A DNA stretch of 64,000 bases from Ophelia neglecta (GCA_965285935.1 OZ260666.1:64728001-64792000), one strand, 5' to 3'; shown: positions 38,301-56,570, counted from the first letter of the stretch. The notes: generated from the sequence alone by a model not told the origin. A program made the numbers and translations.

Positions 38301-41300
38301 GCAATGTTGGTGTCTAAATGAAATACATGTAAGAGCTATACGCCCTATGCTTGGTATTTATTACAATAAGATGTTATTTTGAAAATACCTTCTTTTTTTA
38401 AGTACAGAAACACTTTATACACAGGCTTTTCAGTATTTAGTTATCAACATAAACTCAAAGAAAAATGATACATAAGAGGGTATAAGATATTAAATATGTG
38501 TAGATCACGGTTTTGAACTCGTATATCGTGAAGTCAGTCGCGTATTGCCCGGTGTGTTATGCTTCAAGGTCAGTTAGAACATCCAAATGATACTTCTATT
38601 GTAATGCCTTTAATGACGAGCATACGAAAAGAAGTTTCACTGGCAGCTTGGATACTGAACGAAAGGTGCAAGAACATGATAGAAAGCGGTCACATAATAA
38701 CCTTTAATAATGCCCACACAATATCTGGCTTGTTTGTAGTGAGAACACTACCACAGTGTCAGGTACAACGATACAGTGACTGCTACATATACGCGAAGGC
38801 GACTTTTTTTGCGGCTTGCAATTTTTGATAACCTGCCTGAAACGCTCTGAATTCGTGTCAGGTAGAAATGGTGATTGGCCTCTAAGCCAGGTGGGGCCCT
38901 TCGTAGGCAGAGAAAAAAGTTTACCAACAAAACCCCTGTAGTAAAAAATATTTTTGAGATGACCATTTTAAGGATTACACTAACTTAACACCACCGAGTA
39001 CCGCGTAAGTGACAAAATGAAAACCGTGCAGATGAAGTTTTGTTCAATATTAACAGCGATGAGCAAGGCAGCCTTCGGGATTGAATACCTATATTATATT
39101 AAACTCCTTAACTTATTACCGGCACTTTACCAAGCTTGTGGCTTGACCTAGAGCACTCATTGGTGACACCGGCTGAGGCGACCCGCCGGACCACCAACTT
39201 GAAGACACATACTATCGACAAACTGGATTGTCTCTCACCTGAGTATCGTTCCAAATGATTTCCAGTCGGTGTTTTTTAAGTATCATCGGGTTCTGGTTGA
39301 CGTGGTGTCGGGCTAGTTCCACAGCGGGTAGCACCCCCGGGCCAATCACCTCCTGAACAATATTATCACGGAGGGTCAGGGAAAACAATCCCGCGAGGTA
39401 CAGCGTGTTTCCTCCGACCTTCAAGAAGGACGCGTATAGAGGAACCAGCCACCGAGTGTACATGGTCGGAAAACATAAGAAGAACCTGACAAAAAGCAGA
39501 AGGAAGTCGAGTCTATCTGAGTAAAGACTGAGAAACTGGGCACGTCGGGCGCTAAATTTGCCGGCGATTCATTGCAGCACGAGTGAGTTGGTTTCGTCAA
39601 TACGACTAATAGTGGCTATCCGGCCGCACGGCTGCGCTCCGCATTGATCCGGTGGCAGTCGGCTCTTGGAAGCAGACAGGCGAACGAGCGAACTGAGGCT
39701 GTCGGCACCAGTACTGGCGACCGCGCCTTCCGCCGTCGATATTCAGTCCCTCTAACACTTCTCATACTAATAATGCGACCTGTACAAACCAAAATCCACC
39801 CGTATTCGTCGATATATTATAAAATAAACTACCCTAGTTGAAGCAACCATCATATCCTCCTCACCTCAAATGTTACATTGATGCACCATTAATGCCAAAA
39901 TAGCACACCTTGACATTTTACTGATTCTTTCTACTTCAAAGGAATATTAAATTTGTTTTAAAAAATCTGTCTGTTTAACAAATTTCGATAGCCCCCGATT
40001 ATATTGAACGTAATCGCGAACATTTTTCTCCGCAGTTAAAACAAATTTAATACCCTCCTACTGTCTGTTATTCTTCATATTAAATCTTAAAGCACTTTTA
40101 CACATTCGCGCCACATTGTCCACCAAGGGTCTGAGGTACAAATGTCGATAGAATCCGACTAAAAAAAAACTTAATAGGAAAATGACAGACGTTTTCAGCG
40201 CTCAATGAAATAAAATAAGATAAGCAAGATCTACAATATCATGGTGTGTTACTATTATCATGGACTTTATTATTGATGTCAGACGATTGTGGCGGCTTCT
40301 GTCCAATCTGTTCATACATACAGCCTTTATTGCTTGATGTTGAATACAGGCGCCGAGGCGTCGCCCTCATAACCAGTACAAGGAGAACCCGAAAACCGAG
40401 CATGACAAACATTAGGCCTTTATATAATAGGCATCATTATGTATGGAGTTTTTTGTCGAAGCATAAGAAAAGTAATCTCTTCGTGATCTTATCTAAAAAT
40501 GGAGCAATGTTTCCGTGTTCTGTCTTTTGAATTAACGATCAACATTTGAATTGGAGACATATGCTTTGTCGAATGTAGTTTATTCAGCCGTTTTTCCAAT
40601 GATGCAAATGAATTTTTCGACGAAACTATACAATATCCTAGATAAGGTTATCACGAGGTCATCTCGGTCCTCGTGGCCCATCGCAGAAGGAGACACTGCT
40701 TTGTTGTGTTCGTTTTTGTTTGTCTTGAAGGACTGTTAGTTATTCCTAGGACCAGTTTCCTCAACCAGACGGCATGTTTCCCCGCTTTTCTATAGAGGCA
40801 GCTGTCTCCTTAGGGTCCATTTCACAAATAGATTTGAGATTCTCCGCCTATTTAATCTAGTCTGTGGGGAACCCGTCCTGTGCCTCTAAGGAAGCCCAAA
40901 AAGTATTCAAGTATTTATCGCGTTGAATGTGTGCAAAAACACCCTCGATCGACTGTTTTTGTTAGCTAGTTCGTTGGATGATAGAAGAGGGCCAAGCTGG
41001 AAACAGATCGCATACAATCCTACGGTCGCCTGCTATGTCTCGCCCACTTGAGTTCTTTATAACAGCAGAAACTCGTCACATGTAGAACTGCAAAAAAAAA
41101 ACACACACAAAAAACTGTTTGGAGGAAGAAACCAGAAATCAAATTGCACGTGACGTCACTTCCTCTGAGGCTACGCAATGGGGCTACCTCATTAAACAGC
41201 CGCTTATCAAGGTATTGGCTGTAGGTCTAATAATCATTTCCCCATAAACAAACAGAAGTCCGTCACAAAATATGAAAAAGTATGCTTCGATGAGAGAAAT

Positions 41301-44300
41301 CAGAAATCAATATGCATGGTCCTAATGTTTTTTTTGTAGTTTTAGCAGTAAGAACCACTATCAGAGTAGTATACCACAGTGGTATATTGTCTGCACGTGA
41401 GCCAGATGATCAGCTGGTCATGAGTTCATATCCCGATGTTCGGGTTGGGCTTTTTATAAACTACATTTCCATGTACATTTGTATCCTTCTTCCTGCGTAT
41501 TTTTTAGTTGTTGAACGCAAAGCAGCACTCCATCGTGGTATTCTTTGATCCAATGAGTGCCTCTGGACCGACTGTTGAATGGCCAATATATATATATATA
41601 TATAGCTTTAGCTAACTTAAAGGCTTTGTAGTGTACGAGAAAACGAATCTATTACTAATGGTTGGGCCTACTGCAACACCATATGAGATGAGATGCGAAA
41701 TACTGCCATTGTTCCTTGGGGGAAAAAAAGAGAAAAGTTGAGGTGTGAAAGCTTTGAAATGTGACCCTGTGTGCAATGCCTGTCAGAGAAGATGAAGTCA
41801 TCTGCCAATTTATTTCAAGTTTCTGCCTCCAAAATGTTTGTTTTTGTTTTATTGCCTTTCTCTGTGTGACGCGTTTCTCTTGAAGCTTAATTGTTAACGA
41901 ACGGCTCCCTGGCTGGCAGCCGTGATCCCAAGCCAATTACTTAACTCCTTGTGTCGCTCATCTCCTTTAATCGATCGCTGATTGACAGCCATTGATATAT
42001 TTCGTCGTAAAACAGTAGGCCTAAACTTGTCCTCCATTGACAAGAGCACTTTGTTCTTATATACTCAAACAATTACTCTCCTGTTATCGGCGAATGCAAC
42101 CGGACACCAACTGACTGGCTTTCCGATGTTTGCTGTCCCCGACCGAGGTACCATTCAATATAATTTTGTCGTATTGAGATGAGGGTGGGTTGAAAAGGGG
42201 CTTTTAAGAAATAAACTAATTGAGGCTTATCCGAATGCTGCTTAGTCTCCTATAATAGTGGTTTTGTTTATACGCATGCGCTCATTCTAAAGTCATCTTT
42301 CGACATGATACCATTTTGTAAAAAATTGTTCATCAAATGAACTAGGGCACATACGATTTGACATTCATTCAGGAAAACTTATTATTCAGTTGCTTGAAGG
42401 GAGTTTCTTATTATTGAGCACTAGGCGGATGTCACAAGCAAAGATATCAATGAGCTTGGACCATACGAAGAGATTCAAGATCTTCGATATCACCAATATC
42501 GTATTTCAAAGAAAACACACACCATTCTAACTCACCCCGAACTTTAAGTCGGTTATAAACCAGAATAATCTTCGTGTTAAACGATATGGTGTCTATCGCA
42601 CTCTCGGTAGGAAACGTACCTAATTTATGTATACTGCCTCTATGCTGGCAATTGTGCATTCTGTTTACGCATATTATATATTCCGTGGCATATATAAAAA
42701 ATAAATGAGCAGTTGTTTACCACTCCATACGGGCATGTCGATATTAATTTGTGCTGTGTTTTATCCGAAAGAAATCTCTATTCATCATTTTCAATTAAAT
42801 TTGCCTAGAAGATTGTTTCATATATAGTAATCATGTTCCAGATTTGTCTTTGCTGTCACCCCGCAAGGCATCCCGCAAGCCAACATACACCTGTTTCCGC
42901 CCAACAATAGACAACAATATAATTAGAGCAGGCAACACGTTTTTTTTGGTAAAAGATATCAAGGAAAAGAGAGTCTGCTGGGAGTCTGTCTCTCTTTGAG
43001 AAATCGAACAGTGCCACCACTTCAATTTATTATTTATAAAACCAGAATGGTTCTGTCCGTAGTTGACATTGTCTTGTTATTAGGTCATACACTACCGACG
43101 AGTTTCTCGATGTGAAGAAGAAAATGGCAGATCCTGACGATGCCGATGAATGAATCCTATTTTTATCCCCATTGGGATGCACGTGCACCTCTTGACTTTC
43201 TATGGGCATGAAAACAGTCTCCATTACATTGTTTGCGTCAGCACATATGTATCATAGATCGTTTAAAGCTTATTCTTTTATTGTAGGGGCCTTTTTCATT
43301 GTTGAAGGGAACCCAGGGGCCGTATAAACATTTTAAGGCTTTTCTTGTTGCGAAGAGGTTTGTACTGTCACGTTGATATAAAACTAAACCGTCGCTAGTA
43401 ATTATATTTGTGCTTTACTATATTCTTTGAGATACAGCGAAGAATCTGTTGGTCAACGCTGTTGCGTTAACGACTTTCTTATATTTACTGGGTTGAACAT
43501 TACCGCGGTCCTTAGGGTTTAGGAGTAATCAACCTAGGCTAATGTAGCTGCTGCGTCCCCGAATCCCCTGATAATTGCGGCCTGTGGATTGGGAATTACC
43601 TGTCCAGCCACATGCAGGTCATTTTCATAAATACACACGCACAAGTTTCTGCATACATACATACATACATACACGCACACACACACAAACACCTTCACAC
43701 TCGCACACACATATAACCATAAATCATAATCTTGGTTGATTCAGTTAGGTCACGTTGTCCATCTCGTTATCCAACACTTAACACTCATAGCAAAAGGCAA
43801 AACTTTTCATCGCGCTTTTTACTTTTGTATTATAATTGGAAATTTTGAACCGATATTTTCGTTAGAGTGATACATGTATTTCATAAGTAAAAGTGGTTTG
43901 TTGCCAGGTCACTACACTATATGGTAAAAAAAGAATGCTTTGAATCCTTAATTTAAAAGAGATAAATTATATAATTTAGTATGGTCCATCGCAACTCATA
44001 ATGGCCTTCTTTATAGACGTTTCACCACCTGTGCAATTCATCGAATATATTAAATTGACACTGTAGGTGATCGATGTCTTTGTAATATAGATATACCTAA
44101 TATGATAATCATTCTTTTCAGATTGAAATAAGTACACCAGTCTGGTTCGTGGAATAAAATCATCACGAAATTTGTCGGTGAAACCTATATACTGAGGGAA
44201 ACTAGGAAACTAGGAGCTAACTGTGTAAGTACTTAATTTGTTTTTAACCCTAACAACAATTATCCCTTTTTCCAATGTATAAGTAGTATGTGTGCCGATA

Positions 44301-47300
44301 TCATAAACTTATGTTCAACTTAGGTGAGTTGAAACCGGCTACCTCATCTATAGAAGATTTCGGTCAAACCGACTACCGGTCTGTTTCCACCTGGGATTTC
44401 TCTACCATATTAACTACACTTCTGCGAGATAATTTGAAGTTGCGTCCGAAAGAGCTCATAAAACACATTTCTTAAAACAGGATACCGTTTGATAAATATA
44501 TGCAATAGAATATCTTAATTTATGTCGAGGTTACCACATATGGAGTGCACACCAGTTTGTTCCTCATCGATAAACTTTTTTGTCCAAGTGGGTAGTGTGA
44601 AGTTTCGCCAAACCATTGGTATTCCAATGGAGACAAACTGAGCTCCTTAGGGTGCAGTTGTGCATATATACACTCATGATTTTATTACTAGTTTGTTGAG
44701 GGGTGATTATTAGTGCATAGCCGGGATTTCTTCTTCTCCATTTAAATGTATAGATGATTCTGTTCTATTTAATAACCAATAATTCAGGAAATATCTTATT
44801 GACATTTATCCTCCATTTTTAGAACTTAACGACACTACCGACAGCCCCGATTGTTCATATTTGGATATTTTCTCCTTTAAAACCAAATAACCTCGCAGTC
44901 GATTTTTAAATAAACCTCCCCTTTTCCGATAGCAATATTCCTGTTTCCGCAGCATAGGAGCGTATTTTTCGAGACTTGTGGTCTTCGACAGAGCTTGTGT
45001 TTTTCAGTCTGATTGTAGCGGAGCCTTAGTGTCAAATTTGCTGACCTCGGGTTACGAAACTGCAGATTGAAACGGGCATTTTTCAATAATTTTGAACATT
45101 CCACCAATTCATAATATAATATCTCTAGCATTGCGTTCTTAAAGAATCCGATTACGGATTTTATCAGGCTCGGAGAGAGTCACAATACGGTCGATGACAC
45201 GATGACACTTCATCAGACTGCTTGCTATTGTTTTAACACCTACGCAGTCAAAGACTACAGTGCCTTTAGTGATCAGTTCCACTCATCCTAGTTCTAGGGG
45301 CCATGTATATCTGCTCCATACTGAGCAAAATATCCTATGTTCCCGATGCACATGTTCAGTCACAGCAAACGCGTCACTGGTTCTATTTGCACAAGTAAAA
45401 TGTAACTATCGAGGAGATTTAATGCTATTTTCCTGTTCAGTTTTCAGGAACCTTTGCCACTCCTCTTTGGTGTACTGTTTACTGGCGCACTTTTGTCTAG
45501 TATCTAAACAGTATAAGAGGGCTGACACCTCCATAGCCTCTCTTGGAGCCTATATTATGTCGGTCGTACGTTGACCACTGGCCTGTTTGTTTCGGATCTC
45601 AATCGGAACATGGAAACCTGATGACAACTTCTTATTGCAAGTGATATTAAGTGTTTGTTTCTGGTTGTTTTATTTTGTCACATGTTTATTTGTCGTTTGG
45701 GAGCTGGAAATTGGTATACAGTGAAATCTTGCCTTAAAGACCACCTCTATATTCAGACCATCAGTCCATTGAGACCACACATCTAAAGACCGTACTGTAC
45801 ACTTTAAATGTAAAAAAAAACCTGTCTAAACAGACCACCTCCATATTCAGACCAATACTTTGCAATCCCTTGGGTGGTCTCAATTTACAGGTTTTACTAT
45901 ATTGATGTGTGTGGTGCTGCGGCTGCTGTCTCCTTATGTTTTCTGTTTGAGTATTTTAGGTCAATATCAATTCCAGTTTTCATTTGTCATTGTTTTGCAA
46001 AGAAACTCAGGTTCTAATTTGGTATGTCTCAGTTCGACTTGCATTGTGGTTTTTGTTCATCGTTAAACCTATTCATATTCTCTGTCGTGAACTTATTGCT
46101 ATTTTTCAGTCATTTTAAACGATGTACGTCTTGTTCTTGGAAGAAATGGAGCTTACAAAAAGCATTAATTTACATGGAATATGTCGAATGGTTTGATTAT
46201 TTCACCTGGCAACGAATAACGTTGAAATGCTTTAAACAGTATATGGTCTAGTTCACGTAGGATTAAGTATAAATATCTGTAAATCAATATCAATTGTAAC
46301 TATTTCAGCAGGAAAGATAAACATGTCCTTTACCTTGTATAGCATCATTGCTCGATTACAAGTAATGAAACTTGATCAACTCTTGAGTTGATAACACTGA
46401 AAATATCGATTCTCCTAGAGATTCGGCGCTGATACTCAGTTGAACTCGCTCAATTGTTCTTACATTCGATTGAATCGAAAGTGTAATTTGTATTCGGACG
46501 GACTATTGGCAATAATGCTTCTTCAACAATTCGTTGACTGTTTAATTGTTTTTATACAAAAAAAACTGGCTAATGTTCCCAATATAATATGGAAGACTTG
46601 TTTCAAATCGTTGACACACGTCCTTTCTTACTATGCATACTTCATTCCCACGTGTGAGTATGTTGTTGTTTTTTGTAAGAACATTGTCGGGTTCCGTGGG
46701 TGTTTCTGCCTAGACAAGATAAGCCACCATGCCCTGTAGTATTATTATGGGTATCAGGTATCGACATGTTTGCGTTTTATTGAGATGTATTAAGGGAATT
46801 TGATATCCAGTGTGCAAAATATTGCCTGCATAATTCCAAGCGAAACGAATATTTATGGGGAAAAATATCCTGCCAAAAAATATCCCGGCGATGCAATATT
46901 CATGCGAAAGATAAGCCCAAACAAAGATACATGCCCATAAATGAAAATAGATTAGTAGGGTAAACATTACCAATGTTATGATAAACCCTCAGCCTAGTCA
47001 ACAATGTCCCAGTATTGTTTGTCGACTAAACAACGTTTGGGAGTTATCGTGCTTAAAATGGAGCGCAAATCGAAAAAATGAAGCGCCCCGTATGCATTGA
47101 TTAGACATATGTGCCGTGTTGTGAAACTGCGTCAACTTTGATATGAATAATACGCACCTAATAATATTATTGATCATTGACAGTCAATAGAAAGAGGTGA
47201 ATTTTATGGAATAAAGCTCACGAGTTCCTGCTAAAATGACGTCCATTAAACGAGGAACTGGAAAACTTGTAACGAGTAAACATTTTTAATACTAAATGTA

Positions 47301-50300
47301 CATTACAATAGTGTGATTGCTGTATCAATAGATCAAATAAGCAATAGTCTATTGCCTATTTACCTATGGTTCTTGAAAGAAAAAGAGCTTTTTTGCATGG
47401 TATACACTATATTTCTGTTGCACTGTAGATGAGGCAGCAAACCATCTCCTTTTTGCCAATATAATGTATAACGCCTTTCGTACTTTGTTTTAATGGACTT
47501 ACAATATAAATTGCCACAGAGTAATTAGGTTTTGGAGATAACGTTCAAGTGGGACTCGCGGGCGCCATACCAATTTGATGATCATTCAAATGAGGTTAGC
47601 AGACCTCTGGGGATAGCCTGCAGAAACGACTTCACAGAAAAGTTGTAACGTGACTACAACACTAAAACCAACTAACAAAGACCACGAAACTGATCCTCTG
47701 TCCTTCGAGGAGGGATGAAGGTCACCAAGGTATTATGAGCTTACAACGGGACGTTTATTCGTGGCTTTCCTTTAAGTGCCATCATAATCAGTTTGTTATA
47801 CAATAGCTTTAAATGCCGCTTTGAACTCTATTCTTTTTCTTGGTCTCTGACCAATAGAAAGTTAAGATCCGGAGACGCTTCGCATTAGGTGATTTTATTA
47901 AGGCCAAAGCAGCATGAAAATAAGACGGCATTTGTGAAAGGGATTTTGAAGATATCTTGAGACGCATTTAATGCCCTCTCATCCGTATTGTACAACCTTT
48001 GGTCTAACTCTAAAAATGATTATCACAATATATAAGCCACATTGTCAATCATTTTGTGCAGCTGAGAATTAATTTATGGTCATAGTGAAATATGCCTGCA
48101 TCTTATTATTTGAAAACAGGACGAGGCGAGTTTTTGAGTATACATGATATTGTAGTATACAAAGGGGTTCCCAACGTAACAAACTGGGACCATAAACCAT
48201 ACGCAAATCCGGGAGGTAGCATTTCAAATAAACACTAACCAAAGGTGTTTTACTATCCTATCGTTATGAATGATCCCCAATACAATGCCTACCTGGGTAA
48301 TTTTGTTCGTTATTAGTTATAGGTGAAATAAGGTGTATAATAAATGGTTGCTTTTGGAAGTAGCAACCTTGGTTATTAGTCTTTTCCACAATGGTTTTAT
48401 ACTAACTTCCCCTCCTCCAATTAAGAATTAAAGGCCCAGTGACAATGTTAAATGATATGAGGCCAATTCAACAAGTTAATAGTGTCAGAAATCAAAGGGA
48501 GGCAACGACTTCAGGTATATGTTTGATGTTTATTTATATTCGCTGGAAGGACAGTGGAATAACAATGGGCGATGGAGGGCGATGAAAGGCGGTGGAGGGC
48601 AGTGAAATGGGGTTAAGGGCGATGGAATACGTTGGAAGGCGGTGGAGCACAATAGAAAGCGGTTGAGGGCAATTGAAGACGGTAGCGGGCGATCGAAGGC
48701 GGTGAAGCGCGATGGAAGGCGATTGAAGGCGAAGGAAGACGGTGGTGGGCGACGGAAGGCCGTGGTGGGCGATGGAAGGCGGTGGATGGCTATGGAATGG
48801 AGCGGAGGGCGATGGAAGGCGGTGGGGCACGATGCAAGGCGATGGAGGGCGATGGAAGGCGGTGGGACACGATGAAAGGCGATGGAAGGCGATAGCATGC
48901 GATGGTGGGTGAAGGAAAGCGGCGGAGCAAGATCCAATGCGGAGCATGGCGATGTAAGGATGTGGAAGGCTTTGGAAGGCGTTGGAGAGCAATGGATTAA
49001 AATGCTGGTAATTGGAATTGAGAGGTGTAGAATGGGGCAGTGCCTGTGATAGCCTACTGATTATTTTAAAGAGATTAACCAGGCATTCAAAGGTTAACCA
49101 TTAATGCCAGGGTGAAAAGAACATTTGACAAAAAGATGTATAGCCTCATACCGCAAAACCTGAACTGTAAATAGCAATATAGCACTCATAATACGTCAGT
49201 CATTAAAGATCACTTAGACACATTGATCAACAAATGTTTGTGTTCATTACATATATACCATCATACAATAAGGACAGGTGGCTAAGAAACCCAAGAATGA
49301 AAGATAATCAGGGATAATTGGGAATATCTGCTTCTCACGGAATAAGTGCCGTTATGTAAACTTTTGCTTTGATAGTCATTTCTGTTACTTGGAATGAGAA
49401 CATATGTTATTTCCTGTGTGTCTTGTTTCATGTCACGTTTCATGCAAAAGCATGCAATTTGTTTATATTACGTTTGGTCAACTCAAAAGGTAGGTAAATC
49501 AAAATCAGATGATTGACGGGATTAATAATCCTGTTTATGTCTTTAAGTTAGGAATTATCAGAACTAGCTGATATTAGCAAACTGTGTAAGGAAGTGCCTC
49601 CAGGCTAAGGACAACCCGCGTAAAGGTTAATGAACACATCATATGCATGATCAGTTTCTGATAACATAAGCAACTCAGCATCAACATCGAAAGCTTCATT
49701 ACAGATGTCATTACAGCATGGGAGGTGTGGCAACACAGATAAGAGAGTTGTTGATTAAATCCGGAAGTCGCCAAGTCCTTTTGATAATTGGGCTTATTTC
49801 CTGGTTTTATGGATGATTACGTTCGGAGTGCCCTGGCCGTCCTAAGAGTTCGCAGTCAGTGCAGCCGAGTCCAAGAGTATGTCTCAAGGCAGACAATTTC
49901 GGTGGACCAGTCCCCTCAAGTGTCTTCTATCCGTCTATTGATCGGACGAAATCAATATAATGAAGTCTTTACCAAGCCAGCAAAGTACGCTTTGATCAAG
50001 AGTCAACTAATTAGAATATGCCACAACTGAAAGCAGCATCCATGGTAAGTGCTCGGCATTTTTGGCAAAAACTATGTGGTGAAATTAAGGTGACGAGTGA
50101 CAAAAGACTAAGTAGGTCAGTGCTGCCTGTCATTGGACGTGCAATAATATTGAGAATTGTTGTAATTTTCTCCGCTTTTGCGACGTTCACACATGTGATA
50201 AACCAGTGTGCAGGATCCATTTTACATTGGCCAAATAGGAACAGAAGAATTGCTACAGAGTAGATAAAATGCGCGAAAAACTATATTAAAGAGACAACGA

Positions 50301-53300
50301 ATTATTATTGAGATCAAGATTACCGATAAGTTAGCCTTTTTGGAAACCGGCACCATTAATATGATTCCTTTTCACACCAAAGTATTTATCATCACAAATG
50401 TCGACATTAGAAAAATCGATGAAATAGGAAACATTTTCATAGACTCTGTTATTATGTATTTTATCCTAGGAGATTTAAAATACTGCTGGTCCTGAAAGTT
50501 CGATCCTCATACTTCCAACCTACCCCATAAGATGTTAGAACCCAACCCCAACCTTACAGTCGGGCGTGCTGGTTCACTCCTATACCCCACCTTTTTAATT
50601 AAAAATGTTTGTTTTCAAAATATATTGCCATCATGTAGGATAGGTGTAACCGTGGTGATTTCCTGCCTTTTATTATCTTCAGCCGTAACGGTAATAATTC
50701 GCAAGCAATTGAGTTCTATGGTTTTCATGCTATATTGATAATCCCAGCACACACATGGGGGAAGGGGGGGGGGCATGCGTTTCTAAGCGCCTTGTTATAT
50801 AAGATACTTAGCCGTATTGACGTGCCTTACTTCAAGTATAGCAACTTTATGCGATGATAAATGATCGTTTTTAATTTTCTTTACGATGTGCGCACATTAT
50901 TCCCGGCATATGCGCTTATAAACCTTCTCGTTCTGCTTAACACAATATGCTTACAAAAAAAACATCAATTCTTAAGACTCATGAAAATGAAAGGCAAAGA
51001 GGAAATTTTTGGAAAATACTCCATCATCAGTGTAGCAATCAATGCCTAAAATATGTGTCAAGAGCCTGTGTGTACAATTGGCTTTATTTCCAGATACTAT
51101 TAATCGCAAAGTTGCTGGGGTTTTAAACATACTGACCTTCCACAAACTGCTAGGCGAAATCAATTCAAGTTTTGTTATAATTATCGCCTTTTCTGTTTCT
51201 TTGATAAAAAACACAATCATAGTTATCGCTTTGTCCCCTGAGTATCCACACCCGTTTCTTTAGCTTTTTTTAGCTGAATTTGACTGAGGGCAACTATTCT
51301 CATGGTCTATAAAACGATAAACTCTGGCGTTACTTGGAACTAATATGGTTCAATTACGGAATCACTTCCACATCTATTATATAAAGCGAGGAGCGCGTTA
51401 AGTGAATAATCATCCCTGTGATTATCAGGCCCTACAACAGCAAAGGCCCATTTGTCAGAAGAACACTAACAATTAGTATCATATTGGCTCTGTCGTTACA
51501 GTCGAGAGGAAAAAAGTTAAACCTACTTGTCAACCAGGTAGGGAATTGCCCTACTTTGGTAGTAATTCCACCCTAAGTGTACCTTGGGTCGTGTTCGATT
51601 TACATCTCAAGACAACGCGATTAGGATTCATGGCGCATGCTCTGGAGTGTGTTTAAAAAGTCAAGGTAGAAAAAAAAACTGTCTTTGTTCATATCATGGG
51701 TTCATACGCTGCAAGCCGATGCAACTCTAATAGCCCCCCCCCCCCCCCTCAGAAACAGGCGAACGCGCTCTTGACCTACTTACAGCGACACGTATTGTCA
51801 ATGTAGCCGTTTTATTTGTTTCGATTTGGAACTCGGGTTGGCTAGAGTTGTAAATCGAACACGACCAGTTACATCGCGAAAGAAAGAACAATGGCCACAT
51901 ACACGTACCCAAGTGCTTACAGGTCGAAACGTGATCATTCAATTGAACATCAGTATGCTAGGATTGGGTTCTTTAAATGAAGTTGCTAGATACTTTTATA
52001 TGTACTCGGTGTTTACTCACGAATATAAAGCGTGCAGTGATTAGGTCCATTATTAATTAAATTGTACAGGACGCGTAAATAATTTGATGACCCCATTTGC
52101 AATCTGGTGTTTATAACACGTGACCCTGATTTCAACGCTGGCCTCCTTTTATCTATTTGTTATTGATGGTGGTAAAGAGAATAACATTTAGATTACCTAA
52201 ACAAAGAAGATAGTCGGAATACATTGCTCAGGGATACACTTTATAATAGGAAAGCGTGCGTATTTTTTAAGTTATAATTAGAGTCAGCACTCGATATTTG
52301 TATTTACAGGCAATGCTGAAGCTAAGACAATATTTAGAAACAGAAACGCTACAAAAGAAGATAAATATGAACATATACGCAATGTACGCCATGTATTTAT
52401 ATAAAGTAGTGTCTGTCTGGCATGATGGAAACAGCACAGGCCATAATGTTTAAAACAAGACTTGCTCAACTAGACTCGTCACTTCTGGCCCAAGCATTTT
52501 ATTTTTACCATATGGGTGAGAGGAAACATCGATACCGAGAGTGGGATTCTATTTCTGCGGTAACGTGGAAGGTGAAGATAACCTTTTAAAAGTGGAGAAA
52601 AGAATCATTTCGAGAAGCTTTGTTCAGTGTGGTTCTGTATAATATTTTATTCAATTTTCCATTTTATGCTCTTTTCCTAAGCCCACTGCTGAATTGTAAT
52701 GACCTTTTAAAAAAGAGATATTAGGTGACATTTGCTCATTATTAAATGGTAATGCTTCTTTAAGACTAATCTTTGGAACGTATCAGGTTTTCATGCAATT
52801 GATAACTTGTGAACTGAAACTTCAATTTGAACACCGCGACGGTATAGCGACGTACCTTAAAGCACCTTGGAAAAAATTGGTAGTAACCTGTTATAGCTAA
52901 AGGTTAAAAGTTTTGCCGGGCAATGTTTCGAGACTGAATTAGTGAACATAATGATACACTTTTTTTATTATAAGGATCTTGGGTTGAACATTCAAAGCCA
53001 TTCCAACAGAAAGAAGAGCATATCGGACATAACACGGTACTATGGAAACATCAATCGTGTCTGGAATAATTTTGGGTTGCTTTAGCAGATGTATTTATTC
53101 AATCGAAACGAAGGCAAAAAAACCTGCTCATTCATGGACAGTCAAACTAATCTATTATCAAAAGGCATTATAGACTCAAATTCGCTACAAATGTAACGGA
53201 TCTAGCTCGGCTCGTGACGCGTATTGGCAAATTAACATGATGGCTTCAGTGGTCTCGTTGCAACAAGTAATTGAACGATATAAATTGTACCATCAATGCA

Positions 53301-56267
53301 AAATGCTTTATATATGGCTATCAGCCAAGCTGATACCGTTCTTATACTATTGAAGAATTTTCACCTTCTAGAAACCATACGTCATTAATAGTAGCTTAAT
53401 ATGCACAATATTGCCGATGATATTTTCTGGAATAATCATAGAGATATATCAGATATTTTTCTCACAAACACTTATTGGAATTGATTAATTTGTCATTGTT
53501 AAATACTCTTCAACGGCGACTAAATCACGATATGCTGTGTAGTTGCCCTAACGCATCAGAAAATGTACTTAATTTACTGTTTGGTCTTTTCCCTGCCTAA
53601 TACGGTGCACAGGGAAAACCTGATTACATGATGGCTCACAAGGATTACACGAATTTTAAGAATACTTAAAAAATATTCTTACTATGGCATTAATTATAGA
53701 CCCCTCGTTCATCTACACATAGGCCAAAAATATCAGTAATTTATAAACTCTTTTTATGGGCTTAGGAAGATGATTATGCGGTAACAGCAAACCTCGTAAT
53801 TTATATGTTTGTTTGTTGCATATGAATCCAAACTCGACTTCAAAGAAAACAAATACGTGTCGTTGAAAACTGTTGTCTGCATACATAATCTTACGGCTGT
53901 AATGGAATTACACTTCTTGCCGTAGGCTTTGTAGATTTTGGGTAGATCGGTAGTTTTATGGAGAGGTGTCTTCAGTGGTAATACCTTTGTGGACGTGGGC
54001 AGCCGGAGAGCCGGGGAGTAGGCCTCCGAGGAGTGCTTAATCTGCCAAGCTCTCACGATTTATTTCCTCCCCTGAGATTGGTCCCTGACCGACCGCATTC
54101 CACTTCATTCACAATTATCATACGACTTCCTTTGCTCAGGTAATTAGTCAGGCAACAGATACGGTTTATTGGGTTTTGTCTTAACTCACGGTTATATTTA
54201 GATGTTTGAACGAGGAATTCACTATGTATGCACATTCATTTGGTAATCCCGAAGTTGAAGAATTATTAGGTGGTAGTCATTTCTTAGGGTCTTAGTGAAA
54301 AATGAGAATGAATGCATTGTACATGGTGCACATGACAATTTGTTGCAATTTGATTCGAAAGCTTATTCAAATAACATTTGGTACTGAAAACCTCCCCTTT
54401 TCTTTATTCAGGATCGTAGAATACTCCGTGTACATTGTGTCGGCTCTATCACCCTTAGATGGCAATTGCCATACCCAAATGATATACGTATGTGACAAGT
54501 GATAGTTGTTGACTATCATCAGAGGTGTAATGTTCATGAGCCATGGTTTTATACAACAATCGATACCGACAAGCCTAGTTGGAACTAGCCTTAAATGGTT
54601 TCCAAGCGTTATTGTTGCGGACGTCGCTTGTAAAGAGGGTTTCAATATCTCTTGCAGTTCTGATGCAGAAAGTTTTGTAATAACGATGATACGGTGTATT
54701 ATTTTATATTCGTTGTTATTGTGTACTGAAACTCCCGTTATATAATTCAATTTTTCACAGGATGTTCTTTTCATTTCATTGTTAATATTTAAGAAAAATG
54801 CAGGGATTTCTGATACAATTTCACAATATCAGGCTCCATTTCTCACGTGTTCTGTGAAGTGATGTGTAATTGTGTCATACAACCTAAAATGCATTGTTAT
54901 TTGTTTAATCTGTATGTTATTCCATGTTAATATAGAGAACAAGTTGCATTGATCCGTCAAAATACATTGTGCATAAATAACAATGATATCTTTTTTGTGT
55001 GTGAATTTGAAATTGAGCTTTGACCGATACATAAGAAACAGTAGGGTTAACATTTAGTGTCTGTGTAGTCGAACTATGTCATGCGTTGGCTAAACGACGA
55101 ATGCATCTAACGGGGTCTATAATGTTTAAATCATTATTTTTAAAACTTCATATAACCAAACGGGAAATCGCATGTGAATGAACTGACTACTGGCCAGAAA
55201 ACTTTTTATTGAGAACTTAGTGTCCCTCATTGTATTTTATAGTTGATATATTGATTATTTGATGAGAAGCGACGTATGAGCATATTGACAAATACTGTGG
55301 TGATAATCCACAATGCCCTCATTACGTCCTGGTCAATCACCCAGTATTCTGAGCACTTGGCTATCGATAATTCATAGCGCACCTTCATATAACAGTATGC
55401 CATTTGATAATGTGTAAATCTGCCAGGTATTGTAAGTTTGTTTTCTCGCTATGCTCACACCATTTCATGTAAAAAAGGGAAGGAATGAACATTACAATAT
55501 TTGGTGAAAACATAAATAGGAAGGTTAATGATGTTTTCCTAGAATGGGTTTATGTTTAGATCTGGAATCAGGATTTGGCACATACTAGGAAGATTTCTAT
55601 CATTTAGATAGCGCGAACGTATAATTTGGGCATCTCGAATTCGGATTTGCTTGACTGGACTGACATGGAAACCTTTATGTTGTCAAAGAGGAAAATAATT
55701 ATACAAAAAATAAGAAAAATGAGGAGCCAGTGTTTTGTGAAATGAAAGCAAACGCTGACCGCTGTTTTTTTTCTGAATGATATGTATTAATTATGAGAAC
55801 ATATATATATGTACGTACCATTACTTCTTCTGATTTACTTGTGCCATCTGGCCATTTACAAGTCCATGATCAATTAATAATCAGTAATGTGTATGGCTAT
55901 ATAATCTTGTATGATTAATAATTGTTTGTCATACAAGTATGAGCCAACAACTGAAACTTCTATGATGGTCACAATAATCAACGCTATATAATGTCTGTAG
56001 ATTTAACTACGTAGCTACGGAGTTGTGTCTGCTCACCTGAGTATCGTTCCAAATGATTTCTATTTGGTGCTCTTGCAATATCCCAGGGTTCTGGTTGACA
56101 TGATGGCGGGCAAGCTCCATAGCGTGGAGTACCCCCGGGCCTACCATCTCTGGGACCTTGTGTCCCCGCTGGGTCATAGGGATCAACCCCGCCAAGTAAA
56201 GGGGGTCTCCTCGTGTACCAATCCATGACAAACACAAAAATGCTAGCCACCAATTTGCCATTTCCAT
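7911..56267 (-). CDS. GABBR2: GABA-B receptor subunit 2-like class C GPCR, whole spliced model (exon 1a or 1b plus exons 2-21; about 1102 or 1100 aa)
   Basis: Phase-consistent GT-AG exons carry GABA-B motifs ([65 protein letters not shown]). No sushi domains and no GABA-B1-type GGW-x-GG loop, which favours subunit 2. Exon lengths sum to 3309 nt with exon 1a. Confidence 0.9.
9197..9258 (-). other. Candidate 62-nt cassette exon giving an alternative truncated C-terminus (or a poison exon)
   Basis: gtttgttag| ... |gtaggt; after phase-1 exon 20 it reads [19 protein letters not shown]. Confidence 0.35.
9749..9894 (-). CDS. GABBR2: GABBR2 exon 20 (C-tail; alternative upstream acceptor at 9928)
   Basis: ccttctcag|[48 protein letters not shown]|gttgga; 146 nt, phase 2-1. 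Confidence 0.65.
9984..10141. mobile_element. G-run MITE-like element in intron 19
   Basis: CAGGGGCGGATCTAG ... CTGTATCCTCCCCTG (12/15 inverted match) with G and C runs. Confidence 0.5.
11012..11179 (-). CDS. GABBR2: GABBR2 exon 19 (C-tail, symmetric, two PPxY motifs)
   Basis: ttcag|[12 protein letters not shown]...[18 protein letters not shown]|gtaccc (weak donor); 168 nt, phase 2-2. Confidence 0.65.
11428..11566 (-). CDS. GABBR2: GABBR2 exon 18 (C-tail)
   Basis: tacag|[17 protein letters not shown]...EDIELSSL-R|gtaata; 139 nt, phase 1-2; read-through meets TAA at once. Confidence 0.72.
11556..11661. repeat. About 47-bp tandem duplication spanning the exon 18 acceptor
   Basis: cggtaaacctgKacaaagRatacacgagacat x2 plus a partial third copy. 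Confidence 0.85.
12039..12466. repeat. 47-48-bp tandem repeat, 9 copies, in intron 17
   Basis: Unit TGAGTCACGGACATGTCACTCCGAGCCGCAGACAGATATGTTTGCGC; near-identical copies, no spacers. Confidence 0.97.
12530..12620. repeat. 45-46-bp direct duplication
   Basis: cacatctgtagtcacctctcYgttaggtcttaccaa(g)ctcttctta x2. Confidence 0.9.
12635..12779 (-). CDS. GABBR2: GABBR2 exon 17 (end of coiled coil)
   Basis: aacag|[13 protein letters not shown]...ARTEAQL-G|gtaagt; 145 nt, phase 0-1. Confidence 0.82.
13028..13183 (-). CDS. GABBR2: GABBR2 exon 16 (helix 8, start of coiled coil)
   Basis: tacag|[10 protein letters not shown]...[21 protein letters not shown]|gtcagt; 156 nt, phase 0-0. Confidence 0.9.
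13431..13582 (-). CDS. GABBR2: GABBR2 exon 15 (TM6-TM7)
   Basis: tttcag|[10 protein letters not shown]...[12 protein letters not shown]|gtaaaa; 152 nt, phase 1-0. Confidence 0.93.
14889..14961 (-). CDS. GABBR2: GABBR2 exon 14 (ICL3)
   Basis: ttctag|[25 protein letters not shown]|gtgagt; 73 nt, phase 0-1. Confidence 0.94.
15322..15432 (-). CDS. GABBR2: GABBR2 exon 13 (ECL2 and TM5)
   Basis: tttcag|[37 protein letters not shown]|gtacgg; 111 nt, phase 0-0. Confidence 0.93.
16679..16801 (-). CDS. GABBR2: GABBR2 exon 12 (TM4)
   Basis: ttgcag|[11 protein letters not shown]...[18 protein letters not shown]|gtaagc; 123 nt, phase 0-0. Confidence 0.94.
17041..17148 (-). CDS. GABBR2: GABBR2 exon 11 (TM3)
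   Basis: tttcag|[36 protein letters not shown]|gtagac; 108 nt, phase 0-0. Confidence 0.94.
17591..17723 (-). CDS. GABBR2: GABBR2 exon 10 (TM2)
   Basis: tacag|[31 protein letters not shown]...YMCA|gtaaga; 133 nt, phase 2-0. Confidence 0.93.
18511..18661 (-). CDS. GABBR2: GABBR2 exon 9 (stalk and TM1)
   Basis: tttcag|KGPPRDRT...[12 protein letters not shown]|gtcagt; 151 nt, phase 1-2. Confidence 0.93.
19096..19240 (-). CDS. GABBR2: GABBR2 exon 8
   Basis: cctag|[20 protein letters not shown]...SILWR-G|gtgggt; 145 nt, phase 0-1. Confidence 0.9.
19382..19588 (-). CDS. GABBR2: GABBR2 exon 7
   Basis: ctaag|TSVEYRKLY...[16 protein letters not shown]...[10 protein letters not shown]|gtgagt; 207 nt, phase 0-0. 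Confidence 0.92.
20107..20298 (-). CDS. GABBR2: GABBR2 exon 6
   Basis: ttctag|[24 protein letters not shown]...GTTIAGI|gtgggt; 192 nt, phase 0-0. Confidence 0.92.
21887..21952 (-). CDS. GABBR2: GABBR2 exon 5
   Basis: ttttag|[22 protein letters not shown]|gtaagt; 66 nt, phase 0-0. Confidence 0.92.
26506..26604 (-). CDS. GABBR2: GABBR2 exon 4
   Basis: tttcag|[33 protein letters not shown]|gtcaaa (weak donor); 99 nt, phase 0-0. Confidence 0.8.
26748..26930 (-). CDS. GABBR2: GABBR2 exon 3
   Basis: ccag|[61 protein letters not shown]|gtacgt; 183 nt, phase 0-0. Confidence 0.92.
27343..27480 (-). CDS. GABBR2: GABBR2 exon 2
   Basis: ttttcag|[14 protein letters not shown]...[11 protein letters not shown]|gtaaga; 138 nt, phase 0-0. 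Confidence 0.93.
27746..27935. repeat. Degenerate purine-rich minisatellite (TTCTGAAAGTGAGAGATGAAG core)
   Basis: About 7 copies, variable period. Confidence 0.85.
33133..33188. repeat. 17-bp tandem repeat x3 (GGCAATGCTAATACAAT)
   Basis: Read directly. Confidence 0.9.
34741..34912. repeat. 20-21-bp minisatellite (AATAATATTTCGTTCCCTCGA), about 8 copies
   Basis: Read directly. Confidence 0.95.
39239..39463 (-). CDS. GABBR2: GABBR2 alternative first coding exon 1b
   Basis: ACCATG start; [27 protein letters not shown]...[27 protein letters not shown]; donor CAG|gtgaga; 225 nt, phase 0. Confidence 0.85.
39490..39760 (-). promoter_or_regulatory. CpG-rich leader/promoter of exon 1b
   Basis: Sharp local GC/CpG enrichment directly upstream of the 1b ATG. 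Confidence 0.5.
42450..42580 (-). mobile_element. Possible LINE (CR1/L2-like) ORF2 C-terminal relic
   Basis: [16 protein letters not shown]...[14 protein letters not shown] loosely resembles the LYKSLVRPxLEY...DIxxLExVQR motif. Confidence 0.3.
43630..43712. repeat. (CATA)n/(CA)n compound microsatellite
   Basis: Read directly. Confidence 0.85.
44350..44875 (+). mobile_element. Decayed Penelope-like retroelement reverse-transcriptase fragment
   Basis: Ordered RT motifs with stops and frameshifts: [12 protein letters not shown]...LKLRPKELI; [28 protein letters not shown]; FKCIDD (degenerate YIDD)...IYPPFLEL; [13 protein letters not shown]. Confidence 0.75.
45719..45899. mobile_element. Tc1/mariner-type MITE
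   Basis: TA|CAGTGAAATCTTG ... CAGGTTTTACTA|TA imperfect TIRs with TA flanks; internal repeated GACCAC and inverted GGTGGTC. Confidence 0.6.
48565..48990. repeat. Purine-rich 21-bp (10+11) minisatellite GCGATGGAAGGCGGTGGAGGG, about 20 copies
   Basis: Read directly; accounts for the overlapping low-complexity ORFs. Confidence 0.9.
56037..56267 (-). CDS. GABBR2: GABBR2 alternative first coding exon 1a (signal peptide plus start of Venus flytrap)
   Basis: [31 protein letters not shown]...[27 protein letters not shown]; donor CAG|gtgagc; 231 nt, phase 0. Confidence 0.85.
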
Positions 56268-56269
56268 CA

Positions 56270-56570
56270 GAATGTTAGAAAGTGAAAGGTTTTTCGACTA
56301 AAGTCTGATGTGGTGGGTTGGCTGCAGGGCACAACTTATCAATGCCAGATTACACATACTGCCCGTAGTCAAATCTGCCCGACAATAGCACGATTATTTG
56401 CCAAGACAAATACTCAGCCACCGGCTGATCAGATCCGCACTTATCCAATGAATCCTAGCCCGTAGGGTTTGGACATAGCCACCCGAGTGGTGCAATGGCA
56501 GGGCGTCTTGTATTGGATGCGTCGCGTGCGCTCTCTTAGTAGCTGCAGCAAGCACCAATGGATTACCCTT
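56270..56570 (-). promoter_or_regulatory. Leader/promoter of exon 1a
   Basis: GC/CpG-enriched patch with CCAAT motifs; short motifs collinear with the 1b leader. Confidence 0.45.

What the first reader, a model, noticed from the sequence alone, without database searches (positions are those of the whole stretch)
39239..56267. Tandemly duplicated alternative first exons give one GABA-B2 gene two interchangeable N-termini
Seen: two intact paralogous exons 16.6 kb apart, each with its own ATG, N-terminal hydrophobic segment and start of the Venus flytrap domain. They align without gaps at 44/75 aa identity (38/55 from LYLAGL onward). Both end WNDTQ|GTGAG in phase 0, matching the single exon 2 at 27480. 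I found no second copy of exons 2-21 between them. In the conserved block [11 protein letters not shown], 6 of 11 codons differ only synonymously, which suggests purifying selection on both copies. Known: N-terminal isoform diversity of GABA-B receptors is classically on subunit 1 (1a/1b, with or without sushi domains, via alternative promoters). Inference: a small variable-first-exon/constant-body system on subunit 2, analogous to clustered protocadherins or UGT1A, selected by promoter choice. I do not know of this being described for GABA-B2.
Basis: partly seen in the sequence, partly recalled or inferred. Interest (0 to 1): 0.88.

Follow-up and report, generated by a model that had tools for sequence, protein, structure and literature searches.

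The report
Six alternative first exons, GABA-B2 gene
An invertebrate GABA-B receptor subunit 2 gene has six intact, selectively maintained copies of its first coding exon upstream of one shared gene body, so it probably makes up to six receptors that differ only at the outer tip, but no RNA data exist to show this.

Summary
Both exons lie at the stated coordinates on the minus strand. They share 44/75 residues, both end WNDTQ|GT in phase 0, and they are followed by one exon 2 at 27480.

The array is larger than reported. The genome holds six intact exon-1 copies over about 130 kb upstream of a single exon 2 and a single gene body, and four of them lie outside the window. They fall into two types: I (1a, 1b, 1c, 1d) and II (1e, 1f).

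- **Selection:** all six keep the ATG, an N-terminal hydrophobic stretch (weak in 1b, 1c and 1d) and the GT donor. Synonymous divergence is near saturation (dS 0.7-1.2) and dN/dS is 0.16-0.36.
- **Second species:** a type II exon lies 19 kb upstream of a type I exon on the same strand, and these are the only alignable sequences.
- **Promoter hint:** 1a and 1c/1d share 351 nt of conserved upstream sequence, while their introns do not align.
- **Identity:** the body matches GB2 better than GB1.

The best reading is a multiple-variable-first-exon gene of the UGT1A/protocadherin layout. No RNA run exists for this organism, so usage, promoters and splicing to exon 2 are inferred. Earlier notes of this scan report similar arrays elsewhere in this genome. 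I found no description of this for GABA-B2 in the papers searched.

The parts
56037..56267 (-). Variable first exon 1a (type I). 77 codons from the ATG, with a hydrophobic signal-like core (LAFLCLSWI) and the start of the Venus flytrap lobe 1. Ends WNDTQ|GTGAGC in phase 0.
   Evidence: No acceptor-like site within 120 nt upstream, and an in-frame stop 11 codons before the ATG.
56268..56618 (-). Conserved non-coding block upstream of exon 1a, a candidate promoter/5'UTR. It is shared with exons 1c/1d, which lie outside the window.
   Evidence: blastn aligns -351..+236 of 1a with 1c/1d at 71% over 596 nt, and nothing next to the donor aligns; one 64% block about 0.6-0.9 kb into the intron does. 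Over the 253 nt upstream, 180/242 positions (74%) are identical, against 46-51% for forced alignments with 1b.
39239..39463 (-). Variable first exon 1b (type I), the copy nearest to exon 2. 75 codons, from the ATG to WNDTQ|GTGAGA in phase 0. Its hydrophobic core is weaker than that of 1a.
   Evidence: An acceptor-like CTTCTGCTTTTTGTCAG lies 22 nt before the ATG. Splicing an upstream coding exon into it would shift the frame.
27342..27480 (-). Constant exon 2 ([31 protein letters not shown]...), with the strong acceptor TTTTTTTTCAG|TGT. It is the only copy on this chromosome.
   Evidence: The own-genome search finds one copy on contig C9; the next-best hits lie on other chromosomes at 41% identity or less.
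12908..26957 (-). Constant body of the gene: the rest of the Venus flytrap domain and the seven-helix domain, each exon present once.
   Evidence: tblastn with tick and wasp GB2. HMM of 42 GB2 proteins against six-frame pieces. PDB searches rank GB2 above GB1.
48567..48996 (.). 20-bp G-rich minisatellite in the interval between 1b and 1a. It is not part of the exon system and is listed only as a landmark.

Best explanation
This is one GABA-B receptor subunit 2 (GB2) gene with an array of six alternative coding first exons. In order along the minus strand they are 1f, 1e, 1d, 1c, 1a, 1b, followed by exon 2 and the single constant body. Each variable exon carries its own start codon, its own N-terminal hydrophobic (signal-like) segment, the first strand, loop and helix A of Venus flytrap lobe 1, and a phase-0 GT donor. 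Inferred mechanism: transcription starts at one exon's own promoter, and that exon's donor is joined to the acceptor of exon 2, skipping any exon-1 copies in between. This is the UGT1A and clustered-protocadherin pattern. The products would be GB2 isoforms that are identical from the Cys at the start of exon 2 onward. They would differ in the signal peptide and the first 55-85 mature residues, and probably in where and when they are expressed. Shown here: the anatomy, the single body, purifying selection, and conservation of the two-type layout in a second species. Inferred: promoter choice, splicing to exon 2, and any functional difference between isoforms.
For: (1) Six intact copies and one body. 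The own-genome protein and profile searches find exon 1 at six places on C9 (window 39.2k and 56.0k; beyond the window at G000:C9:64822585-64822809, 64823692-64823916, 64859895-64860155 and 64885368-64885679) and exon 2 once. tblastn and an unfiltered HMM of GB2 over window positions 1-184000 find each body exon once, exon 1 six times, and nothing else above noise. (2) All six have an ATG, an upstream in-frame stop and a GT donor after DTQ in phase 0. (3) Selection: dS is 0.7-1.2 with dN/dS 0.16-0.36 among paralogs, and Fisher p for pN<pS is 4e-4 to 2e-6. A neutral simulation without indels keeps the ORF, ATG and GT in only 0.5-2% of copies at that divergence. (4) On ENA contig ERZ25069296:ctg22095 of a second species, a type II exon (P0273) lies 19 kb upstream of a type I exon (P0002) on the same strand, with no body exon between them. 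These are the only sequences alignable between the two loci. pN is 0.17-0.31 while pS is saturated. (5) The tree separates type II (1e, 1f, P0273, P0276) from all other GB2 first exons with 100/100 support, so the two types predate the split of the two lineages. (6) 351 nt upstream of 1a and 1c/1d are conserved (74% identity), more than synonymous sites (about 47% identical), and nothing next to the donor aligns. (7) No acceptor-like site lies before 1a, 1e or 1f. The acceptor-like sites before 1b and 1c/1d would all shift the frame, so two copies cannot be read in tandem. (8) Both exon types align to the same N-terminal segment of solved GB2 chains.
Against: There is no transcript evidence of any kind: no RNA run for this organism is indexed. 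TSSs, exon 1 to exon 2 junctions and relative usage are therefore unknown. No sequence element is shared by all upstream regions, so separate promoters are not demonstrated for 1b, 1e and 1f. By Kyte-Doolittle hydropathy the cores of 1b and 1c/1d are weak. 1c and 1d are a 99.9% identical tandem duplicate, so they count as one functional type and may be polymorphic. Genes made of small exons inside the 130-kb array cannot be excluded; only long ORFs were checked.
Confidence: 0.75

Rival explanations
1. Only one first exon, for example the proximal 1b, is used. The other copies are untranscribed relics of partial tandem duplications of the gene's 5' end.
For: No RNA evidence exists. 1c/1d show that small duplications of this exon do arise. 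A crinoid GB2-like gene model also carries a very recent exon-1 duplicate.
Against: Relics at dS of about 1 should have lost the ORF, ATG or donor: 0.5-2% survive per copy in simulation, before indels are counted. All six are intact, with dN/dS 0.16-0.36. Both types are retained in the same order in a second species whose surrounding sequence is unalignable. The upstream non-coding block of 1a and 1c/1d is conserved.
Confidence: 0.08
2. The copies are mutually exclusive internal exons, Dscam-like or preceded by non-coding leader exons, all transcribed from one or a few far-upstream promoters. The choice would then be made by splicing, not by promoter.
For: 1b and 1c/1d have acceptor-like polypyrimidine-AG sites 4-64 nt before their ATGs. 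No promoter element common to all copies was found.
Against: 1a, 1e and 1f have no acceptor-like site within 120 nt of the ATG. Every copy carries its own start codon and N-terminal hydrophobic (signal-like) segment, which is the first-exon pattern. The 351-nt conserved block directly upstream of 1a and 1c/1d fits a duplicated promoter/5'UTR. The protein outcome would be the same as in the best explanation.
Confidence: 0.12
3. The distal copies belong to one or more separate GB2 paralogs whose remaining exons lie elsewhere, or the array is an assembly artefact.
For: 1c/1d are near-identical. The Logan DNA contigs bridge their junction by only 28-30 nt, below the tool's 31-nt criterion.
Against: No second exon 2 or body exon exists on this chromosome. 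The copies other than 1c/1d differ by 25-30% in DNA, so they cannot be haplotype or assembly duplicates. The same type II to type I order appears in an independent assembly of another species.
Confidence: 0.04

Closest known systems
Multiple-variable-first-exon clusters (UGT1A, clustered protocadherins alpha/gamma, GCNT2), as reviewed in PMC1885805
   Same: A tandem array of paralogous coding first exons lies in one orientation upstream of a single set of constant exons. Each variable exon has its own start codon and signal sequence and a 5' donor. Paralogs are under purifying selection with lineage-specific expansion, and there is a duplicated upstream block (1a and 1c/1d).
   Different: The variable exon here is small (75-104 codons). 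It replaces part of a domain (first strand, loop and helix A of the flytrap) rather than a whole substrate-binding or ectodomain unit. There are only six copies. No promoter element common to all copies was found. Two or three copies have acceptor-like sequences. Usage is untested.
GABBR1a/GABBR1b alternative promoters of vertebrate GABA-B subunit 1 (my own knowledge)
   Same: N-terminal isoform diversity of a GABA-B receptor subunit, generated at the 5' end of the gene.
   Different: In GB1 the alternative start adds or omits two sushi domains, and the two starts are not paralogous. Here the exons are homologous, interchangeable versions of the same flytrap segment, the subunit is GB2, and there are six.
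Dscam1-type clusters of mutually exclusive internal exons (PMC1397879)
   Same: Tandem paralogous exons of which only one can be present in a productive mRNA.
   Different: Dscam exons are internal, each with an acceptor and a donor, and are chosen by splicing. Here each copy begins the reading frame, and at least three lack an acceptor-like site.
Solved GB2 subunits: Drosophila 9jqx_B and human 4f11, 7c7q_B, 6uo8_B (PMC12499500)
   Same: The constant body and both exon-1 types align best to GB2. The exon 1/2 boundary falls right after the DT(Q/E) motif that precedes a Cys in these proteins.
   Different: No N-terminal exon array is described for these proteins in the papers searched.

Membership tests
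GABA-B receptor subunit 2 (class C GPCR) | Venus flytrap (ANF_receptor) domain followed by a 7tm_3 domain, collinear with known GB2 | tested here: met
   tblastn with tick (P0133) and wasp (P0150) GB2 covers residues about 64-807 in order along window 56k/39k to 13k. The HMM of 42 GB2 proteins hits each exon once in order.
GABA-B receptor subunit 2 (class C GPCR) | Closer to GB2 than to GB1 | tested here: met
   The exon-1 profile and three body exons each score GB2 chains above GB1 chains in the PDB. Examples are 52.5 against 34.9 bits, 65.9 against 41.4 bits, and 51 against 40 bits.
GABA-B receptor subunit 2 (class C GPCR) | Heterodimerises with GB1 through the C-terminal coiled coil and couples to G protein | not tested
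   The C-terminal exons were not analysed. Function needs an experiment.
Multiple-variable-first-exon gene (UGT1A / clustered protocadherin layout) | Tandem paralogous first exons, same orientation, upstream of one set of constant exons | tested here: met
   Six copies on the minus strand of C9 over about 130 kb, with one exon 2 and one body.
Multiple-variable-first-exon gene (UGT1A / clustered protocadherin layout) | Each variable exon has its own start codon and 5' splice donor, in a phase matching the first constant exon | tested here: met
   All six have an ATG with an upstream in-frame stop and a GT donor after DTQ in phase 0. Exon 2 begins in phase 0.
Multiple-variable-first-exon gene (UGT1A / clustered protocadherin layout) | Variable exons lack a 3' splice acceptor | tested here: inconclusive
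   1a, 1e and 1f have none within 120 nt of the ATG. 1b and 1c/1d have acceptor-like sites, all of which would shift the frame. This is a sequence heuristic only.
Multiple-variable-first-exon gene (UGT1A / clustered protocadherin layout) | Each variable exon has its own promoter | tested here: inconclusive
   A 351-nt conserved upstream block is shared by 1a and 1c/1d. No element is common to all copies beyond the shuffled expectation at k = 10-11. No TSS data exist.
Multiple-variable-first-exon gene (UGT1A / clustered protocadherin layout) | Each variable exon is seen spliced to the first constant exon in mRNA | not testable with these tools
   The look-up of sequencing runs lists no RNA run holding this locus. 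Protein searches returned only genomic read-through ORFs.
Dscam-type mutually exclusive internal exon cluster | Every alternative exon is internal, with both an acceptor and a donor, downstream of a common exon | tested here: not met
   Each copy opens the reading frame with its own ATG and N-terminal hydrophobic (signal-like) segment. 1a, 1e and 1f lack acceptor-like sites.

The most novel reading that the evidence does not exclude
The six first exons may be more than promoter carriers and may make functionally different GB2 subunits. The variable exon encodes the strand-loop-helix A unit of lobe 1. In GB1, the loop just before helix A supplies the pocket tryptophan (W65/W182, PMC12499500). 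By my reading of the numbering in the alignment, the homologous loop of GB2 is the most variable part of these exons. Type II exons also add a charged N-terminal extension. Different neurons could therefore build GABA-B receptors whose 'silent' GB2 flytrap has a different cleft or different extracellular partners. That would be a small cell-type code on a class C GPCR, kept since before the split of at least two invertebrate lineages.
Probability: 0.25. Interest if true: 0.78.

Novelty: new member of a known kind. Interest (0 to 1): 0.62.

Why it matters
N-terminal diversity of GABA-B receptors is known for subunit 1, not for subunit 2. The GB2 flytrap is treated as a ligand-free, invariant partner. 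A conserved array of interchangeable first exons on GB2 would show that some invertebrates diversify exactly this part. It would offer natural variants for asking what the GB2 flytrap's first strand, loop and helix A contribute. It also adds a class C GPCR to the short list of genes with a UGT1A/protocadherin-like variable-first-exon layout. Together with earlier notes of this scan, it suggests that such arrays are common in this genome. The claim is directly testable with one RNA-seq or long-read cDNA data set.

Tried and rejected
- **RNA evidence:** The look-up of sequencing runs on the exon 2-8 region returned only three DNA-like runs of one sample, so no junction or TSS test was possible.
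- **Read laying:** I used the single call on the 1c/1d duplicate instead. Contigs reach only 28-30 nt across the unit junction, which is weak support that the duplicate is real.
- **Annotated isoforms in relatives:** a full-length search with tick GB2 listed only arthropods. Isoforms at more than 90% identity would be collapsed into one cluster anyway.
- **Short-protein searches:** profile searches with all six exons and with type II alone found only genomic read-through ORFs and no spliced DTQ-CD junction. Type II appeared in only two other assemblies.
- **Protein atlas:** a search with exon 1f gave only unnamed clusters.
- **Shared promoter element:** no 10- or 11-mer with one mismatch is shared by the five upstream regions beyond shuffles. 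The 9-mer excess came mostly from 1a/1c homology (the first attempt timed out).
- **Intervening genes:** only long ORFs were checked. One THAP-domain ORF was found and nothing else.
- **Rejected readings:** a separate paralog with its own body and haplotype or assembly duplication for all copies except 1c/1d.
All searches were done exon by exon, by reference.

Full report
**1. The observation**

The gene lies on the minus strand.
- Exon 1a is window 56267-56037 and encodes 77 residues ([28 protein letters not shown]...WNDTQ).
- Exon 1b is 39463-39239 and encodes 75 residues ([26 protein letters not shown]...WNDTQ).
- Both end CAG|GTGAG in phase 0.
- They align without internal gaps at 44/75 identical residues.
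- In [11 protein letters not shown], six of eleven codons differ only synonymously (read).
- Exon 2 begins at 27480 behind TTTTTTTTCAG.
- At the DNA level the similarity stops at the exon borders.

**2. What else is there**

A search of the window's own genome with exon 1a found two more copies about 39 kb further upstream and a weaker one about 100 kb upstream. Fetching 120 kb beyond the window and running tblastn with full-length GB2 proteins found a sixth. A profile of all six finds exactly these six places in the 762-Mb genome; all other hits are weak and lie on other chromosomes.

| Exon | Place | Codons | Type |
|---|---|---|---|
| 1b | window 39463-39239 | 75 | I |
| 1a | window 56267-56037 | 77 | I |
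| 1c | G000:C9:64822585-64822809 | 75 | I |
| 1d | G000:C9:64823692-64823916 | 75 | I |
| 1e | G000:C9:64859895-64860155 | 87 | II |
| 1f | G000:C9:64885368-64885679 | 104 | II |

All six lie on the minus strand. Each has an ATG preceded by an in-frame stop, an N-terminal hydrophobic stretch, and a GT donor directly after DTQ in phase 0.
- Type I exons read ...LYLAGL...[16 protein letters not shown]...WNDTQ.
- Type II exons read ...VRVAAPLALTD.RG.TPASEGVL.AIKLA..H.NK.K.IL....FS.LIKDTQ.

Exon 2 exists once on this chromosome. I built an HMM from 42 GB2 proteins and ran it without filters against every six-frame piece of window positions 1-184000. It hits each body exon once (27.5k to 12.9k) and exon 1 six times. 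Everything else is at noise level, E > 5. So there are six first exons and one body.

**3. Is the gene GB2?**

The exon-1 profile and three body exons each score solved GB2 chains above GB1 chains: Drosophila 9jqx_B and human 4f11, 7c7q_B and 6uo8_B. Type II exons alone also hit the same N-terminal segment of Drosophila GB2, with E = 8e-5. The body is collinear with tick and wasp GB2.

**4. Are the copies kept by selection?**

- Nei-Gojobori estimates give dS 0.82-1.14 and dN/dS 0.26-0.36 among 1a, 1b and 1c over the full exons. Over the last 55 codons they give dS 0.70-1.05 and dN/dS 0.19-0.27. For 1e/1f, dS is 1.23 with dN/dS 0.25 (0.81 and 0.16 over the last 55 codons).
- pN < pS holds with Fisher p from 4e-4 to 2e-6.
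- In a neutral simulation at 0.4-0.55 substitutions per site, ignoring indels, only 0.5-2% of copies keep an open frame plus the ATG and GT.
- Flanking intron sequence next to the donors is unalignable, but 351 nt upstream of 1a and of 1c/1d still align. Identity there is 74% over the 253 nt nearest the ATG, against about 47% at synonymous sites and 46-51% for forced alignments with 1b.

The last point is the pattern expected if a promoter/5'UTR was duplicated with the exon and is still under constraint.

**5. A second species**

The closest database relatives are unnamed ORFs from ENA assemblies. Two of them, P0002 (type I) and P0273 (type II), lie on the same 51-kb contig, ERZ25069296:ctg22095.
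- In the merged 34.9 kb of that contig, the type II exon lies 19 kb upstream of the type I exon on the same strand. No body exon lies between them or in the 10 kb after.
- These two exons are the only sequences that align between that contig and the 184 kb studied here.
- pN is 0.17-0.31 while pS is saturated.
- Both have clear signal peptides.
- In a tree of first exons, type II (1e, 1f, P0273, P0276) is split from all other GB2 first exons with 100/100 support. The window genome's type I copies form a clade (91/92) sister to P0001+P0002.

So the two-type layout predates the split of these lineages. The type I copies multiplied later in this lineage, or were homogenised.

**6. 1c and 1d**

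These are a tandem duplicate of a 1107-bp unit at 99.9% identity. Logan DNA contigs of the only available runs reach 28-30 nt across the unit junction. That is just under the tool's criterion, so the duplicate is probably real and possibly heterozygous, but it is not proven. It counts as one functional type.

**7. First exons or cassette exons?**

1a, 1e and 1f have no polypyrimidine-AG site within 120 nt of the ATG. 1b and 1c/1d do, at 4-64 nt, and every such site would put the exon out of frame with an upstream phase-0 donor. Two copies therefore cannot be read in tandem, and the copies are mutually exclusive at the protein level. These sites could instead serve non-coding leader exons. I found no sequence element common to all upstream regions.

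**8. Mechanism**

The best-supported reading is a multiple-variable-first-exon gene, the layout reviewed for UGT1, GCNT2 and the protocadherins in PMC1885805. One promoter fires, and its exon's donor is joined to exon 2.

The variable part covers the signal peptide and GB2 residues equivalent to about 55-106 of human GB2, which is the first strand, loop and helix A of lobe 1. In GB1 the pocket tryptophan W65/W182 (PMC12499500) sits a few residues before the helix-A motif. By my inference from the chain numbering, the homologous loop of GB2 is encoded by the variable exon, and it is the most variable stretch among the copies. Whether the isoforms differ in function or only in regulation is unknown.

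**9. What is missing**

No RNA run of this organism is indexed. All database ORFs are genomic read-throughs (DTQ followed by V from the GT) rather than spliced products. Expression, TSSs and junctions are therefore inferred.

**10. Known or new?**

Full-text searches for GABA-B2 or GABBR2 with alternative first exons or promoters found nothing relevant.

Earlier notes of this scan describe similar first-exon arrays in other genes of this genome and call the genome probably annelid. I did not test that. If it holds, this gene also conflicts with a preprint stating that GABBR2 was not detected in Spiralia (10.64898/2026.09.08.749565).

**Verdict**

- It is a new member of a known kind of gene organisation.
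- Interest is 0.62.

Noticed in passing
L019:545-2760 (G000:C9:64822545-64824760), outside the window: Exons 1c and 1d sit in a perfect tandem duplication of a 1107-bp unit at 99.9% identity, with one amino-acid difference (G/R). Logan DNA contigs bridge the unit junction by only 28-30 nt.
   Followed up: partly
L044:10001-12095 (Anneissia japonica VUNX01047817.1): The RefSeq model XP_033114460.1 (GB2-like, crinoid) reads two 97%-identical copies of its first exon, 1.7 kb apart, in frame. This is either a very recent exon-1 duplication or an assembly artefact, since the locus holds 3804 N. It shows that exon-1 duplication recurs in this family.
   Followed up: partly
L024:2787-3224 minus strand (between exons 1e and 1f): A 146-codon open frame with a THAP domain (Pfam E = 5e-7). 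It is probably transposon-derived and is the only recognisable non-GABA-B coding sequence found in the array.
   Followed up: partly
window 48567-48996: A 20-bp G-rich minisatellite of about 18 copies lies between exons 1b and 1a. It causes the local GC-skew peak and the long proline-rich ORFs on the minus strand.
   Followed up: no
window 39234-39262 and 56032-56060: The last 24 exonic nt and the first 5 intronic nt of 1a and 1b are identical (GAAATCATTTGGAACGATACTCAG|GTGAG), although dS is about 1 elsewhere. This could be a splicing-related nucleotide constraint or a short gene-conversion tract.
   Followed up: no
whole gene, window 12908-56267: A 2026 preprint (10.64898/2026.09.08.749565) reports GABBR2 as not detected in Spiralia. 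If this genome is an annelid, as earlier notes say (untested here), this GB2-type gene and the ENA relatives argue against that absence.
   Followed up: no
G000:C7:19481394-19506359, C12:65031703-65206442, C2:42019334-42063131: Other GABA-B-family loci of this genome show one exon-1-like and one exon-2-like hit each. The exon-1 array is therefore specific to the C9 gene.
   Followed up: no
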